Source: Octopus sinensis (lineage: Eukaryota). Taken from it: a stretch of 64,000 nucleotides of DNA. Below the pieces are notes generated by a model, which saw only the letters and a list, made by a program, of their open reading frames with translations, did no database searches and was not told where the DNA came from. Position 1 is the stretch's first letter. Every line of letters begins with the position of its first letter. The stretch is from positions 44,764,001 through 44,828,000 of the forward strand of contig NC_043004.1 of assembly GCF_006345805.1 (NCBI RefSeq), in the 5' to 3' direction. A program made the translations under genes and the position numbers. This document shows, one piece after another, positions 8,694 through 64,000 of the stretch.

Positions 8694-9009
8694 CCAGCCA
8701 GATTTTGCGATATAGTCTAAGAAACGCGGTGTTTTCTTGTTGTTGTTGTTGTTAAAACTCTATTGTAATATCGGTTTCAAATTTTGATACAGAACCAGTA
8801 GTATTAGCAGAAGTGTGCCTCGGTCACATCGACCCCAGTATTCAACTAGTACCTATTTTATCGATCCGAGAAAGGCAAAGTCCACCTCAGTGGAATATGA
8901 ACAAACACAACGTGAAGACGAACGAAATGCTTCCATGCCTGGTTTTCATCTTCAATAATGACAACATAAAATCTGGTGCTCTTCGAATGCTTCTGCGCCT
9001 ACATCGCAG

Positions 9010-9600
<591 letters not shown>

Positions 9601-12165: not shown

Positions 12166-13048
12166 TACAGTATTGTCCCGAAAGTAATGCAAAAGAAGTC
12201 ATAACTATTTTAGAAACTGTCATATGTCAATAATAAGGCGCATAGTGCCATGTGATGCAAAAAATTCTTCGTCGATGCATTGTTGAAACCAACTCGCAAG
12301 TCGTCTTCCAAAAAAATTTAGGTGTACACTTCATAGCCGATTTCGCTGTATGTATTATCCATTTGTTGTTCCGCGAGACTGTTCTTCATTTGTCCAAAGA
12401 TGCCTGATCCGGACAGTACGGGTGATGGGGACTATTGACTAGCGGAATTCAACAGCCTGATCTTTACGTGGTCACGTGTTGTCCAGGTGAATGTGGATAG
12501 TTTTCATGTTCTTGCTCTTCCTCTTCTAATGGCTTCTAATGGCTTTGAATGCCCCAATGTCCTACACGTTGTTGAGAGAGGGCACAGTAATGTTCTACAA
12601 AATCAAGGCCAATGACGACATTGTCATCGCCAAAATGTCACCGTGACTCTCTGTTTCGGTTGCTGGCTCTCGAATTTCATAGACCTCTAAGAAGACGTGT
12701 AATGCTATTCTGCGGAGGGAACCTTCTCTTTTTCTGCTTAAATATACTATCACGTTTTATCCCCTGAGGCCAGTTCCAAAACAAATACTGTCTTCATCGG
12801 TTTCAAATGCTTCCAGCAGATCATTGCACTCTTACACTTTTCTCTCCTTTATCACAAATGTAAACTTCCGAGGTTTCGACTTTGCACACACTTTCCGTTG
12901 TATAAAGTCTTCCACCATCTTCTGTAATGTATCGTGGCCATAGTCTAGTTTTGCTTCAAGCTCATGGATTGCGGCTCGTTTGTCCGTGCGAATCTAATCG
13001 ACCATCAGCTAGTGGTTAGTGTCCAGAGGCTGCAGTTGAAGACCATAT
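12166..13048 (-). mobile_element. Decayed mariner-type transposase with TIR remnant
   Basis: Minus-strand translation gives ELEAKLDYGHDTLQKMVEDFIQRKVCAK (VCARWVP-like), GDKT..YI (GDETW-like), HLDN and HHPYCPDQAS (HPPYSPDLAP-like). TIR-like TACAGTATTGTCCCGAAAGTAATGC at 12166. Confidence 0.75.
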
Positions 13049-13057
13049 CATTCTTTG

Positions 13058-13357
13058 TTGTTGTTGTTGTTGTTTGTTCCTTCTCGAGCCATGCCTGGCT
13101 CATAAGGGCCGGTTTCCCGGTTTCTTGGCGTATAGGTTCCCCGCCTGGACGGGACGCCAGTCCGTCGCAGGTGAGCTGCAAGATGTGGGAGGAAAGAGTG
13201 AGAGAAAGTTGTGGCGAAAGAATCAGCAGAAGTTTTGCCATTACCTTCTGCCGGAGCCGCGTGGAGCTTAGGTGTTTCGCTCATAAACACACACATCACC
13301 CGGTCTGAGATTCGAACCCGCGAGTCCGCTGCTCTAACCACTAGGCCATGTGCCTCC
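13058..13357 (-). mobile_element. tRNA-derived SINE family D (tail X) ending in (AAC)n
   Basis: GGAGGCACATGGCCTAGTGGTTAGAGC A-box, GTTCGAATC B-box, GAGCGAAACACCTAAGCTCCACG body. Homologous to 38515-38818. Confidence 0.9.
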
Positions 13358-13365
13358 AATGTGTT

Positions 13366-13485
13366 ACGCTTACTACACCTAAGTTTCTCAAGCGGTCACC
13401 CATCTAAGTACTGACTCGGCTCGAGGCTGCTTAACTTCGGTGATCGGACGAGAACCGATGCTTTCAACGTTATATGGCCGTAAGC
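13366..13485 (-). rRNA. Full-length (120 nt) 5S rRNA copy, probably a retropseudogene
   Basis: GCTTACGGCCATATAACGTTGAAAGCATCGGTTCTCGTCCGATCACCGAAGTTAAGCAGCCTCGAGCCGAGTCAGTACTTAGATGGGTGACCGC...GTAAGC. Helix I ends pair, A- and C-box motifs are recognisable, the 3' half is diverged, and there is no oligo-T terminator. Confidence 0.92.
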
Positions 13486-14278
13486 ATTCTTTGGGATACC
13501 ATGAATGCTGATTTCCCTTTTCAAATTATTTATCAATCTATGCACATATGATCACGTCAACGGTGTCATCTGAATAAAAACTTGTCGCCTTCCGTGGATG
13601 TCGAACTACAAGCAACCTTTTTTTGTAAAGAACTGAATGATGGCACATTGCTTGTACTTGGAATTCATTATCTGCAATGAATACGGACAGGAGGGCAAGT
13701 TACTATACAGTAAAACTTACTCTTCCAGCATGAGCAACTTCAATAACCTATGTCTATTCATAAAAAACTAAGCCAACTTTTGAATTACAATTGTGTATAT
13801 GTATAAATCACAGTATGCATGTATGCACAAATATATATATGTGTGTGTGTGTGCGTGTGTATGTGTATGCGTGCACGCGTGTATGTAGTATAACTACACA
13901 AGCCTAATACATATGTACAATCATATGGAGAAGCTATAAATTATGCTGGTGATAACATTTCATCTTTGCTTCGCACTGAACACGACTTCGACATTCTGAC
14001 TAGTATGACGTAACATTAGAGGTACATTTCTAAATGTCGATGTTATGTGATACTATACGCGAGCAGAAACACACACGCACACACACACACACATACACAC
14101 ACATACACACATGCACACACACACGCACATGCACGCACACACACACAACACACGCGCACACACACCAGGAGATGCTTAGATAAAAACAGACAGATAGATA
14201 GATAGACTGACAGACAGACAGGCAAACAGACAGACAAGTAGACAGACGTATGGAGGCAGGGAGAGGTATATAGAGATG

Positions 14279-17629: not shown

Positions 17630-19240
<1,611 letters not shown>

Positions 19241-19685
19241 CAGACAGACAGACAGACAGTCAGATAGATTTATACATTTCGTAGCATTTATACATAGGTC
19301 ATTCAAAATGCTGATGTTGGTAGACTAATTCTTACTTTATAGTAACTTGCTAAGATATTTAGATTTCTAAACTTCGTAGTATTTTAATAGAAAGAAAACT
19401 GCCACAGAATGGTACTTACCATGTCAAAGGATAATAGCTACCTTGTATTTGAAATAAGTTTTATAAGTAAAGTATTTTCGGCCACGAATTCCCAATTGTT
19501 ATGGAACATTTAACTGTCAGAATTTTATTTTGCTTTCGTTTCTAATGTCCCAACCTATCCCATTGAACTGGAAGTGTTTCTGATTTTCGTACGTCAAACA
19601 CTGTTTTTTATTGATGTTTCTTGTGAACACTGCATATAGGTGTATATGTACAAATATATGCAAATGTACACTCATATATATATAC

Positions 19686-38274: not shown

Positions 38275-39025
38275 TATTTTAGGCACAAGGCCCAAATTTT
38301 AGGGGAGGGTACTAGTCGATTGCATAGACCTTAATGCTTAAATGGAATTCAATTTATCGACCTCGAAAGAACGAAAAACTAAGTTGGAATTTGAACTCAG
38401 AACATGAAGACACGAAGTGATGCTAAAGAATTTGGACAGGGCGCTAATATTTTGCCTGCTCGCCGCTTTAACAACTACAGCAAAACTAATAATGTTTTCT
38501 ATTTATCTATTATTTATGCGCCCTTATCAAGCCTAGCCAGGCTCATGGGCCCGGTCTCCCGGTTCCTATGGCGTATGTGTTCCCCCCAGCTGGAGGGGAC
38601 GTCAGTCCATCGCAGCGTTACTCAAGAAACAGGAAGAAAGAGTGAGAGAAAGTTGGGGCGAAAGAGTACAACAGGGGTCGCCACCACCCCCTTCCGGAGC
38701 CTCGTGGAGCTTTAGGTGTTTTCGCTCAATAAACACACACAACGCCCGGTCTGGGAATCGAAACCGCGATCCTCCGACCGCGAGTCCACTGCCCTAACCA
38801 CTGGGCCATTGCGCCTCCAATGCTTTCTATTACAGGCACATTACCTGAAATTTTGGAGGGGAATGAGCTAATCTATTACATCGACCCCAATGGTACTTAT
38901 TTTATCGACTCCAAAAGGAGGGAAAGTAAAGTAGACATTGGCGGAACTTGAACTCAGAACTTTGAGATGGCTGAAATGCCATTAAGCATTTTGCCCGGCG
39001 TGCTGACGATTCTACCAGCACGCTG
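38275..39025 (-). mobile_element. SINE A remnant + SINE D (38515-38818) + SINE A remnant
   Basis: Family motifs as above; D head GGAGGCGCAATGGCCCAGTGGTTAGGGC. Confidence 0.85.
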
Positions 39026-39774
39026 TTTTAGGAACAGTAGTAACAATATAAACGAAAATACAAAGCGAATCGTAGCAGTTGCACGAGGATGTATGCTTGT
39101 ATTGAAGGCAACACTCTTAAACATGTAATTAACAGGTAATTATTATTATATAATTACGACAATTCTCGCAAAGTCATTTGCATAAACATCTAAATAGAAT
39201 GCTGATTTAACCTTAAAACAAATCAGCATAACGTGTTGCAAAGGAAAAAATTAAAAGATTTCCTGCATACAACCATCTCTCTATATATTCTTTCATTTTT
39301 TTTTTTTCATTCTTTTACTTGTTGCAGTCATCTAACTGCGGCCACGCCGGAGCACCACCTTAAAAAGGTTTTAGTCGAAAAAAGTTTGCCCCAGGACCTA
39401 TTATGTTTTTAAGACTAGTACTTATTCTATCAGTTCTCTTTTGCCGAACAGTTAAATTACGGGTACGTAAACACACCAACACCGGTTGTCAAGCGGTATT
39501 AGTGGGGACTAGCACAGGCACAAAGACACGCGTACATACATACATACATACATACATACATACATACATACATACATACATACATAACATATGTATATAT
39601 ATATATATATTATATATATATATATAATTATATATATAATATAATATGTATATATATATTATATATATTATAATATATAATATAATATTAATTTCATTGA
39701 TAAATTTATAATATTTATAGTTTTAGCCATTTTAAATTTATTTTTTTAAAATTTGATATTTTTAGATGTGAAAT

Positions 39775-55800: not shown

Positions 55801-56197
55801 GTGGAGGCGCAATGGGCCCAGTGGTTAGGGCAAGCGGACTCGCAGTCGTCTAGATCGCGGTTTCGATTCCCAGACCCGGGCGTTGTGAGTGTTTTATTGA
55901 GCGAAAACACCTAAAGCTCCACCAGGCTCCGGCAGGGATGGTGGTGATTCCCTGCTGAACTCTTTCAACCACAACTTTCTCTCACTCTTACTTCCTGTTT
56001 CTGTTGTACCTGTATTTCAAAGGGCCGTGCCTTGTCACTCTCTGTGTTACGCTGAATATCCCCCCGAGAACTACGTTAAGGGGACACGTGTCCTGTGGAG
56101 TGTGCTCAGCCACTTACACGTTATTAATTTCACGAGCAGTCTGTTCCGATGATCGGTCAAATGGAACCCTCGTCGTCGTAACCGACGGAGTGCTCCT
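55801..56197 (+). mobile_element. SINE with family D head and tail Y, 13-bp TSD
   Basis: ACAGTTTCTAATT at 55788-55800 and 56198-56210. Confidence 0.92.
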
Positions 56198-61676: not shown

Positions 61677-61776
61677 NNNNNNNNNNNNNNNNNNNNNNNN
61701 NNNNNNNNNNNNNNNNNNNNNNNNNNNNNNNNNNNNNNNNNNNNNNNNNNNNNNNNNNNNNNNNNNNNNNNNNNNN
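61677..61776. other. Assembly gap (100 N) truncating a SINE A copy (61570-61676)
   Basis: Run of N. The true distance across the gap is unknown. Confidence 0.99.
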
Positions 61777-62119
61777 TCTCTCTCCCTCTCTCTCTCTCTC
61801 TGAACATATCCGCTCTCTCCCTCTCTCTCTCTCTCTCTGAACATATCCGCTCTCTCGTCTCTCCCTTCCCTCTCTTCTCTCTCTCTCCCTCTCTCTCTCT
61901 CTCTCTGAAATATCCGCTCTCTCTTCTCCCCTCCCTCCTCTCTTCTCTTTCTCTCTTCTCTCTCCTCTCTCTTCTCTCTCCCCTCTCCCTCCCTCTCTCT
62001 CTCTCTCTGAACATAACCGCTCTTTCCTCTCTCTCTTCTCTGTCTCTCTATTTCCATCCTCCTCTCTCTCTCTCCCTCTCTCTCTTTCTCACATTTTATT
62101 CTACGAAAAATCACATATC

Positions 62120-64000
62120 AAATGGCCAGAAGGCCACATCCTTTCCGGAATGTCACTGCATGAACAAAAGCATGTAGAGTCATTACTTGAACTTACTAAT
62201 AAGCTATTCGCGGAGCAATTGTTACTCAGGCAATCAGGTGAAATACATATTGGATCTCTGCTTCACAAATAATGTGGACCTTATCCATAATGTGAAGGTG
62301 ACACCAACAGCACTCTCAGATCACAACATTGTTGAACTAACGATGTATGGTCCTGAGCGAACTGCTGGTATCTACCCTATCAGGAGAACTCAAATCTTAT
62401 CCAACGAGAATTTCTGTAAAGCAAAATGGGAATCAATCCACAAAGAGATCCACAAACAGAACTGGTTCAATATTCTACGTATGCAAGTCAGTTTGTGTCA
62501 AACGTGCAAGCCGAATACACTAAATATACATCCAGAAAGAAAGGCTAGCATACTGGCAAACAAGATTCCCAGAGACAGAAAAATCCTTATGAGACGTAGG
62601 TCAAAGGACTCAGATCGGCTGAATAGACAACTGAAGGATAAGAAGAAGTCTTAATACGGACACTCCTAGGAATCGAAAGCAAAATCAAACTCTCTCACGA
62701 AAGGGAAAGAACAGAGAGAGGGAGAGAGAGGGAGAGAGAGAGAGAGAAGATAGATGTAAAAAGCATAAAAAAAAATAAATCCCAAGGCTTTCTATAAGGT
62801 TGCAAAGGAAAGCGTCACAATACAATATAGAATAGGACCATTATTCCGAGGGAATGACTCACTGACCGCAGACCCAGGAAGGATAAGTGAGATACTCAGT
62901 GAACAATTTAAGAGTGTCTTCACATCCCCCCTTTGGACACATGCAGGTAAAAAATCCTGCTGATGTAACAGCGGCCAAAGATAAAATGAGCTCATGCCCC
63001 GCAACTGGTCCTGATGGCTTCCCAGCTATTCTCCTGAAGCAGGCGTTAGTGTGAATGGTAAACTTTCGATATACAAGTGGGTCAAGATAACCAACATGCA
63101 GTTTAATGCTGGAAAATTTCAAGCACTGAACTATCAACTCACGAATGCACTACAGCCTGCATATACAAGACTCGAAGGCACTACAATCCCAGAGTCACAA
63201 GCAGTGAAAGACTTGGGATCAGTATGTGCAATGTCGAATCATTTTATATGCAAATTACCAAGCTGGCAGCAAAGTCCAGATATCTGGCAGGATGGATACT
63301 GTGGTCCTTTAGGGCAAGAGACCAAGAAACTATGTTGACTCGGTGAAAAATATTTGTTCTCAGCTGCTTGGACTACTGCGCCTAATTATGGTCACCACAT
63401 AGTGCCAAACTACCAGCAGAGCTTGAAGCAGTCCATCGTCACTGCACTAAAAATTAAAACAGTGCAGCGGATGAGCTACAGGATAGGCTGAGAAAACTGC
63501 AGCTTTGCTCCCTGGAGCGAAGGCGTGAGGGTTATGCAATGATCTACATATGGAAAACTCCAGAAGGGCTAGTACCTAATTTCGGCATTGAGCGTTATAC
63601 AAATGCCATAACTGTCCGCCGTTGTATTGTACCAAACGTAACATGTATTCTATATAAATTCAGGACCAGGTACTGCAATAGTCCAGGGTTCAAAGGCCCA
63701 CATCTCTTCAATGCTCTGGCACAAAAATTTATAAATCTGCATAAGGTGGAAGTACATGTCTCCAAAAAGGAACTAGACGTCTTCCACTCCACAATACCGG
63801 ATGAACCAACAGTCCAACATGAGATGCAGGCGAGGGCAGCGAAATCAGAGCCCCTTATACACCGAATTGACCAACAACTGAGATAAAGGCACATACAGGA
63901 GTAATGTGAAACCTCCCAGACTGAGGAAATCAGAAAGACCACGGTGGTGCTCCATCATGACTACAGTTGCATGGCTGAAACGAGTAAAAGAGTAAAAGAG
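62120..64000 (+). mobile_element. CR1/L2-group LINE with internal deletion of most of RT, ending in a SINE B-like tail
   Basis: APE end ILDLCFTNN.DLI.NV...LSDH; NPKAFYK; GPDGFPAILLK joined directly to MQFNAGKFQ; VKDLG; SLERRRE.YAMIYIWK..EGLVPN; tail GGTGGTGCTCCATCATGACTACAGTTGCATGGCTGAAACGAGTAAAAGAG. Confidence 0.88.

What the first reader, a model, noticed from the sequence alone, without database searches (positions are those of the whole stretch)
13049..13493. 5S rRNA-tRNA-SINE chimera inserted as one unit
Seen: on the minus strand a complete 120-nt 5S copy is followed after about 8 nt, with no T-run terminator, by a full SINE D ending in (AAC)n. The 9-mer CATTCTTTG lies on both sides of the whole 5S+SINE block (13049-13057 and 13485-13493, overlapping the 5S first base), and mariner-like sequence appears to continue on both flanks. 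Known: LINE-driven insertion makes TSDs, and both template-switch chimeras and 5S-headed SINE3 families exist in other animals. Inference: this is one retrotransposition of a fused RNA carrying both a type 1 (5S A/C box) and a type 2 (tRNA A/B box) Pol III promoter. It is either a one-off chimera or a member of an undescribed dual-promoter SINE family.
Basis: partly seen in the sequence, partly recalled or inferred. Interest (0 to 1): 0.78.

Follow-up and report, generated by a model that had tools for sequence, protein, structure and literature searches.

The report
5S rRNA fused to a SINE
A complete 5S rRNA copy joined head-to-tail to a complete tRNA-type SINE was pasted as one piece into a dead mariner transposon; it is a clean single example of a known retrotransposition accident, and I found no sign that it founded a family.

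Summary
Rfam finds one full-length 5S rRNA (13485-13367, minus strand, 89.9 bits). Nine to ten bases later a complete tRNA-headed SINE begins (13357-13058, AAC-type tail). The sense strand has no T-run. The 9-mer CATTCTTTG lies at both ends of the block.

The flanks are one degraded mariner. An intact relative (P0001, contig L001) aligns on both sides of the block. The flanks joined with one copy of the 9-mer fit L001 to within 1 nt, which gives a paralogous empty site.

Seven other copies of this SINE lack a 5S: two in the window and five on public contigs. They carry their own 7-13 nt duplications and 0-12 extra 5' bases. The AAC-type tail is the SINE's own. Neither half of the block has its own duplication.

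Best reading: one LINE-driven insertion of a chimeric cDNA. The reverse transcriptase most likely finished the SINE RNA and then jumped to a 5S rRNA. This kind is known (U6/L1 and 5S/L1 chimeras). It is also the proposed origin of the 5S-headed SINEs AmnSINE1 and HaSE3.

Interest is modest.

The parts
13485..13493 (-). Upstream copy of the target-site duplication (sense CAAAGAATG). Its last G is also base 1 of the 5S.
   Evidence: Exact 9-mer repeat spaced 436 nt apart. It aligns to CCACGCAGTG of the intact mariner L001.
13367..13485 (-). Full-length 5S rRNA retrocopy (119 nt). The region of the type 1 internal promoter (5S positions 50-97) lies at 13436-13389. No terminator follows.
   Evidence: Rfam RF00001, 89.9 bits, model 1-120, three non-standard pairs. 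No T4 run. Only 5S in the window.
13358..13366 (-). Junction bases TAACACATT, which derive from neither the 5S, the canonical SINE nor the target.
   Evidence: The SINE 5' end is set by 8 aligned copies. Ordinary copies carry 0-12 such extra bases between their duplication and GGAGGC. The bases are absent from the mariner empty site.
13079..13357 (-). Complete tRNA-headed SINE body. Box A is TGGCCTAGTGG (13348-13338). Box B is GGTTCGAATCT (13318-13308). A private 15-nt deletion lies near 13321.
   Evidence: 71-77% identical to seven other copies over its whole length. Rfam tRNA scores only 13.7 bits.
13058..13078 (-). The SINE's own AAC-type tail, AACAAAC(AAC)4AA.
   Evidence: Copies L013 and L020 end in the same GAGAAGG-AACAAACAA.
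13049..13057 (-). Downstream copy of the target-site duplication (sense CAAAGAATG). Its CAA end could have paired with the tail during priming.
13494..13732 (-). 5' part of the degraded mariner-like element that received the insertion (N-terminal helix-turn-helix region).
   Evidence: 72% DNA identity to L001 bases 2-238. Protein match to P0001.
12278..13048 (-). 3' part of the same mariner-like element (rest of the transposase, with frameshifts and stop codons).
   Evidence: 68-71% DNA identity to L001 bases 266-1077.

Best explanation
This is a one-off chimeric retrocopy. A LINE reverse transcriptase nicked the mariner target after ...CATTCTTTG on the + strand. It primed on the AAC-type tail of a SINE RNA and copied that RNA to its 5' end, including the few extra bases this family usually shows there. 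It then continued on the 3' end of a mature 5S rRNA instead of joining the target, and copied the 5S to its first base. The product was joined to the target, which left one 8-9 bp duplication around 5S + 9-10 nt + SINE. Ligation of the two RNAs before reverse transcription would give the same product.

Shown: the block is a single insert relative to the mariner, it has one duplication, and both parts are complete.

Inferred: the template switch itself, and that the copy has not propagated.
For: 1. Single insert. The intact mariner L001 has 27 nt where the window has 464 nt. The flanks joined with one 9-mer give 28 nt; with no 9-mer they are 8 nt short and with two they are 10 nt long.
2. No private duplications. 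No word of 6 nt or more is shared between the 60 nt upstream and 80 nt downstream of the SINE part, and nothing brackets the 5S alone. Ordinary copies have duplications of 11, 8, 12, 7 and 12/13 nt (for the four contig copies; read by eye for the window copy at 38.5 kb).
3. The 5S runs from base 1 to its mature 3' end, in sense orientation, with no T-run, no flanking gene sequence and no tail.
4. The spacer resembles the 0-12 extra 5' bases of ordinary copies.
5. The tail is the SINE's own.
6. Seven other copies lack a 5S.
7. Published precedent: sense, full-length small-RNA/L1 chimeras with one duplication are ascribed to template switching or RNA ligation (PMC13174262). The same route is proposed for 5S-headed SINEs (PMC4824008, PMC3272025).
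Against: 1. Only one locus was examined, and there is no orthologous empty or half-filled site.
2. The spacer begins TAACA, which resembles the AAC tail. An earlier 5S retrocopy with an AAC tail, later hit by the SINE, is therefore not excluded.
3. The duplication overlaps the 5S G at one end and the tail's CAA at the other, so it may be as short as 6 nt.
4. The host genome could not be searched, so the one-off status rests on a sample of seven copies.
5. A 9-10 nt spacer is long for untemplated addition.
Confidence: 0.66

Rival explanations
1. The block is a member, or the founder, of a propagating SINE family with a 5S head. In this reading the 5S type 1 promoter drives transcription and the SINE's 3' end recruits the LINE. 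The copy seen here would be one of several.
For: The anatomy is what a young AmnSINE1- or HaSE3-like element should look like: a complete 5S, a complete SINE body and tail, and no terminator between them. The 15-nt deletion shortens the box A to box B spacing to 19 nt. That would shift dependence onto the 5S promoter, much like the loss of tRNA sequence described for DeuSINEs (PMC4758252).
Against: None of the seven other copies has a 5S. The 5S is still full length and near-canonical, so there is no sign of evolution as a mere promoter. No second junction was found in any collection I could reach, although none of them holds the host genome.
Confidence: 0.15
2. Two separate insertions occurred at this site. 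A 5S retrocopy with an AAC-type tail landed in the mariner and made the 9-bp duplication. The SINE later homed into the start of that tail.
For: The spacer starts TAACA, which is like the tail repeat. A duplication made inside a microsatellite would be invisible. Another SINE family in the window also ends in (AAC)5, so AAC tails are common here.
Against: The bases CATT next to the SINE are not repeated after its tail, and no shared word of 6 nt or more exists. Ordinary copies have clear 7-13 nt duplications. The AAC-type tail is encoded by the SINE itself. My rough estimate of the chance that a SINE starts within 10 nt of the only 5S in 64 kb, in the same orientation, is below 1%.
Confidence: 0.1
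3. The fusion arose at DNA level at a source locus, where a SINE had inserted just downstream of a 5S gene. A read-through transcript driven by the 5S promoter was then retrotransposed here.
For: No terminator lies between the two parts. This route would also yield a single duplication.
Against: A canonical 5S gene is followed directly by its T-run (established knowledge). The 10 nt after the 5S here contain no T-run and look like the SINE family's usual 5' extra bases.
Confidence: 0.06

Closest known systems
LINE-mediated chimeric retrocopies (U6/L1, U3/L1 and 5S/L1; Buzdin et al. 2003 as cited in PMC4758252 and PMC7245038; catalogue in PMC13174262)
   Same: The insert has two parts. A small-RNA copy sits 5' of a LINE-mobilised sequence, one duplication surrounds both, and there is no tail between them. 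A sense-oriented, full-length 5' partner, as in U6/L1, points to template switching or RNA ligation.
   Different: The 3' partner here is a complete SINE rather than a 5'-truncated L1, and the LINE has a non-poly(A), AAC-type tail. Human 5S/L1 chimeras are mostly antisense and truncated (PMC13174262); this 5S is sense and complete.
AmnSINE1 / SINE3-type DeuSINEs with a composite 5S + partial tRNA head (Nishihara et al. 2006, as described in PMC4824008 and PMC4758252)
   Same: A 5S rRNA sequence is fused to the 5' end of a tRNA-derived SINE head. The proposed origin is a template switch from the SINE RNA to 5S rRNA.
   Different: Those are multi-copy families with a trimmed tRNA part and a Deu domain. 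Here there is one copy, the whole SINE is retained, 9-10 junction bases are present, and no Deu domain was identified.
HaSE3 of Helicoverpa armigera (PMC3272025)
   Same: An invertebrate chimera of 5S rRNA with a tRNA-derived SINE (HaSE1), which shares that SINE's body and tail. It is ascribed to template switching.
   Different: HaSE3 is a family found in several species, and its 5S replaces the tRNA head. Here the tRNA-like head is kept and no further copies are known.
Composite SINEs with two Pol III-type heads (Tu types of tree shrews, GarnAlu; PMC7245038)
   Same: Two promoter-bearing small-RNA modules lie in tandem within one retroposed unit.
   Different: Those combine 7SL and tRNA modules and are established families.

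Membership tests
Chimeric retrocopy made in one LINE-driven event | One target-site duplication brackets both parts, and the pre-insertion site carries a single copy of it | tested here: met
   The 9-mer lies at both ends. The paralogous empty site L001 fits one copy to within 1 nt.
Chimeric retrocopy made in one LINE-driven event | Neither part has its own duplication, and no tail lies between the parts | tested here: met
   No shared word of 6 nt or more around the SINE part. No repeat brackets the 5S alone. The 5S is followed by 9-10 nt and then the SINE.
Chimeric retrocopy made in one LINE-driven event | The 5' partner ends at the mature 3' end of a small RNA, and the 3' partner carries the LINE-recognised tail | tested here: met
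   Rfam model 1-120 is matched with no T-run. The tail is shared with L013 and L020.
5S-headed SINE family (SINE3, AmnSINE1-type, HaSE3-type) | A 5S-derived head that includes the box A / IE / box C region | tested here: met
   A full 5S is present, including positions 50-97. This is sequence only; promoter function was not tested.
5S-headed SINE family (SINE3, AmnSINE1-type, HaSE3-type) | Many dispersed copies with the same chimeric structure and different duplications | tested here: inconclusive
   One copy was found, and none of seven other SINE copies has a 5S. The host genome is in none of the searchable collections.
5S-headed SINE family (SINE3, AmnSINE1-type, HaSE3-type) | Pol III transcription from the 5S promoter and mobilisation by a partner LINE | not testable with these tools
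   This needs expression data or assays.
tRNA-derived SINE (SINE2) | Box A and box B motifs in a tRNA-like head | tested here: met
   TGGCCTAGTGG matches TRGCNNAGTGG at 11 of 11 positions. GGTTCGAATCT matches GGTTCGANNCC at 10 of 11. The motif consensus sequences are from established knowledge.
tRNA-derived SINE (SINE2) | Significant similarity to a tRNA | tested here: inconclusive
   Rfam tRNA scores 13.7 bits, E 7.7. ARAGORN finds none.
tRNA-derived SINE (SINE2) | Dispersed copies with a defined 5' end, a tail and duplications | tested here: met
   Eight copies were aligned. Five ordinary copies have duplications of 7-13 nt.
Functional 5S rRNA gene | Intact helices, a T-run terminator, and usually a tandem array | tested here: not met
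   Three non-standard helix pairs, no T-run, and a solitary copy inside a transposon.
mariner (Tc1/mariner) DNA transposon, as the host of the insertion | A transposase with HTH_48 and Transposase_1 domains | tested here: met
   The window copy is too decayed for Pfam or the PDB. It matches P0001, which carries PF17906 and PF01359, at E 1.7e-40 over 97% of its length.

The most novel reading that the evidence does not exclude
The block is a young member of a real SINE lineage that carries a complete 5S head in front of a complete tRNA-type head. That would be a living intermediate of the route proposed for AmnSINE1 and HaSE3, in a host group where no 5S-headed SINE turned up in my literature searches.
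Probability: 0.15. Interest if true: 0.55.

Novelty: new member of a known kind. Interest (0 to 1): 0.3.

Why it matters
5S-headed SINEs such as AmnSINE1 and HaSE3 are thought to arise when a reverse transcriptase jumps from a tRNA-type SINE RNA to 5S rRNA. The families we see today are already trimmed, so that first step is inferred rather than observed. This locus shows the untrimmed product. Both partners are complete, the junction bases are still in place, there is one duplication, and a paralogous empty site exists. It is a useful textbook-style example and a search seed. It is not a new mechanism. It would matter more if a genome-wide search found sister copies, because that would catch a promoter swap in progress.

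Tried and rejected
1. Pfam scans of the single-frame flank translations and a PDB phmmer search gave no mariner hit. The copy is too decayed. A search with the stitched translation solved this.
2. The translated whole block searched against the 5.8-billion-protein index gave no hits.
3. A junction pattern scanned against metagenome contigs gave nine loci. All are chance bacterial matches without a 5S. The same pattern gave nothing in viral contigs.
4. Two conserved SINE words found nothing in GTDB genomes or viral contigs. Those collections do not hold this host.
5. Exact look-ups of three ORFs that overlap the block found nothing on record.
6. I looked for a degenerate 5S upstream of the 38.5 kb copy, because MAFFT aligned a few bases there. 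It is rejected: Rfam finds no 5S at E up to 10, and the sequence is the 3' end of another SINE.
7. I tried to date the 5S against a native 5S. No reference for the host is available, and my remembered invertebrate sequences proved unreliable (one search shows the same first 13 bases in vertebrate 5S). I dropped this test.
8. Host identification failed. The run accessions appear in no paper. P0005/L024 was a spurious match with no DNA similarity to the block.
9. I tested whether the spacer is a templated SINE leader. L013 (TTTACACCT) and L020 (TTACACA) resemble TAACACATT, but in L020 the motif is part of the duplication. This stays unexplained.

Full report
**What is there**

On the minus strand, Rfam finds a single full-length 5S rRNA at 13485-13367. 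It scores 89.9 bits against a gathering score of 38 and covers model positions 1-120. It is the only 5S in the window. Three helix pairs are non-standard. No T-run follows it, and the block has no run of four or more T at all. The first such run lies 268 nt beyond the block.

After G13367 come nine bases, TAACACATT. A tRNA-headed SINE then begins at GGAGGC (13357). Box A (TGGCCTAGTGG, 13348-13338) fits its consensus perfectly. Box B (GGTTCGAATCT, 13318-13308) fits at 10 of 11 positions. The tRNA likeness is otherwise weak: Rfam gives 13.7 bits at E 7.7, and ARAGORN finds nothing. The body ends at ...GGCTCGAGAAGG (13079). The tail AACAAAC(AAC)4AA runs to 13058.

The + strand 9-mer CATTCTTTG lies at 13049-13057 and at 13485-13493. 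One copy overlaps 5S base 1. The other overlaps the repeat phase of the tail. The real duplication is therefore 6-9 nt. In this repeat-rich window, 1.2% of random placements give a flanking repeat of 9 nt or more within +-3 nt.

**The flanks and the empty site**

The flanks looked like mariner by eye, but Pfam and the PDB gave nothing. A translation stitched across the frameshifts hit one intact 348-aa transposase, P0001. It carries HTH_48 and Transposase_1 and matched at E 1.7e-40 with 39% identity over 97% of the query.

Its contig L001 (a Logan assembly of run SRR26545701) aligns at DNA level to window 13732-13504 and to 13039-12278, at 68-72% identity. Between these two anchors L001 has 27 nt and the window has 464 nt. 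The difference of 437 nt matches the 436-nt spacing of the two 9-mers to within 1 nt, that is, the block plus one 9-mer.

| Flanks joined with | Length between anchors | Difference from L001 (27 nt) |
|---|---|---|
| one 9-mer | 28 nt | +1 |
| no 9-mer | 19 nt | -8 |
| two 9-mers | 37 nt | +10 |

The duplicated bases align to mariner codons: CCAAAGAATG against CCACGCAGTG. This is a paralogous empty site. 5S, spacer and SINE together form one insert, and the spacer does not come from the target.

**The SINE family**

The window holds two more copies. One is at 38522-38816 (minus strand, 77% identical). It follows a different SINE and has no 5S, even at Rfam E up to 10. The other starts at 55808 (+ strand). 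It shares the head and centre but has a different 3' half.

An exhaustive phmmer search with the block's long ORF found six short ORFs. One of them (P0005, locus L024) proved spurious. The contigs of the other five gave five more independent copies: L013, L018, L019, L020 and L021. Three of the five alignments (L013, L018, L019) start one base before GGAGGC. The other two (L020, L021) start further inside the SINE. None reaches the spacer or the 5S, and none of the contigs contains a 5S.

The eight-copy alignment shows three things:
- The 15-nt deletion in the head is private to the block copy. It lies between two TCGCGG repeats and leaves 19 nt between box A and box B, against about 34 nt in the others.
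- The 3' end GAGAAGG-AACAAACAA is shared with L013 and L020, so the AAC-type tail belongs to the SINE.
- Sequences upstream of GGAGGC are unrelated between copies.

The ordinary copies have clear duplications (for the four contig copies; the window copy was read by eye):

| Copy | Duplication | Extra bases before GGAGGC |
|---|---|---|
| L013 | 11 nt | 12 |
| L018 | 8 nt | 7 |
| L019 | 12 nt | 2 |
| L020 | 7 nt | 3 |
| window copy at 38.5 kb | 12 of 13 nt | 0 |

The block's 9-10 nt spacer therefore matches a normal feature of this family's 5' ends. For the block, no word of 6 nt or more is shared between the 60 nt upstream of the SINE part and the 80 nt downstream of it. Nothing brackets the 5S alone either.

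**Mechanism**

The simplest account is a single target-primed reverse transcription. The nick falls after CATTCTTTG on the + strand. Its TTG end can pair with the CAA of the RNA tail. The SINE RNA is copied to its 5' end with its usual extra bases. Synthesis then continues on the 3' end of a mature 5S rRNA, through to base 1, and the product is joined to the target.

A sense-oriented, full-length small RNA at the 5' end of a LINE-mobilised sequence, inside one duplication, is the signature ascribed to template switching or RNA ligation for U6/L1 chimeras (PMC13174262). That paper reports that human 5S/L1 chimeras are mostly antisense and truncated, which it links to twin priming. That pattern is not seen here. 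I cannot separate a template switch from prior RNA ligation.

Read-through from a 5S gene is unlikely, because no T-run or gene flank follows the 5S.

A two-step history at this site remains possible: a 5S retrocopy with an AAC tail first, then the SINE homing into that tail. The spacer does begin TAACA, and AAC tails occur on another SINE family in the window. This history would need a SINE insertion without a visible duplication in a family that normally shows one. It also leaves the CATT bases unexplained.

**Comparison with known systems**

The fusion of 5S rRNA to the 5' end of a tRNA-derived SINE is already the accepted origin model for several families:
- Vertebrate SINEs with a composite 5S + partial tRNA promoter region (Nishihara et al. 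2006, as described in PMC4824008, and PMC4758252).
- Insect HaSE3, described as a chimera of 5S rRNA and the tRNA-SINE HaSE1 (PMC3272025).

This locus works like the first step of that route. Membership of such a family is not established. Its defining feature, many copies with a uniform chimeric structure, could not be met with the data available. No collection I could search holds the host genome.

I could not identify the host. The related contigs come from Logan runs SRR11869384-94 and SRR26545701 and from ENA ERZ23283403. None of the accessions I searched appears in the paper library.

**Verdict**

The single-unit insertion is well supported. The dual-promoter family is untested and not favoured: none of seven sampled copies has a 5S. 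The phenomenon is a known kind, so I rate it a new member of a known kind, of modest interest.

| Reading | Probability |
|---|---|
| One-off chimeric retrocopy | 0.66 |
| Member of a real 5S-headed family | 0.15 |
| Two insertions at this site | 0.10 |
| Read-through from a source locus fused at DNA level | 0.06 |

Noticed in passing
window 55808-56110 (+): A SINE copy shares the head and central region of the SINE in the block (as far as ...CTCACTCTTACTTCCTGTTTCT) but continues with an unrelated 3' half. It looks like a module swap between SINE families, that is, a different LINE-derived tail.
   Followed up: partly
window 38830-39030 (-) and 8760-9130 (-): Copies of a second SINE family contain ...GTCGATAAAATAAGTACC..., which is reminiscent of CORE-type SINEs (from memory, not tested). 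The copy at about 8.8 kb ends in (AAC)5 (8753-8739). The copy at about 38.9 kb directly abuts the 5' duplication of the next SINE.
   Followed up: partly
L013 bases about 629-673; L020 upstream of base 1142; window 13366-13358: The bases just upstream of GGAGGC resemble each other in three copies: GTGTTTACACCT, TTACACACAA and TAACACATT. In L020 the motif is part of the target duplication. It could be a templated leader, a target preference or chance. It is unexplained.
   Followed up: partly
window 17630-19269: A tandem repeat of about 516 bp, with at least three units at 99% identity. Each unit carries a (GATA)n array. Its period is too long for the TRF run.
   Followed up: partly
window 62118-62654 (+): A LINE fragment with an open 155-aa ORF. 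It is 70% identical to P0002 (PF14529, endonuclease-type domain), and 73-83% identical at DNA level to contigs L011 and L012. It is a possible relative of the partner LINE, but it shows no 3'-end similarity to the SINE.
   Followed up: partly
window 19289-19350: A short match (80-89%) to the 5' end of the same mariner family (L001 bases 3-37). It is probably a terminal fragment or a miniature derivative.
   Followed up: no
window 61677-61776: A run of 100 N (an assembly gap), inside a CT-rich simple-repeat region.
   Followed up: no
whole window: The window has 35% G+C and a very high microsatellite load: 84 TRF rows, many of them (TA)n, (GATA)n, (ACAT)n and long (AAG)n or (TTC)n tracts up to 1.2 kb. 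No convincing host protein-coding gene was seen among ORFs of 110 aa or more.
   Followed up: no
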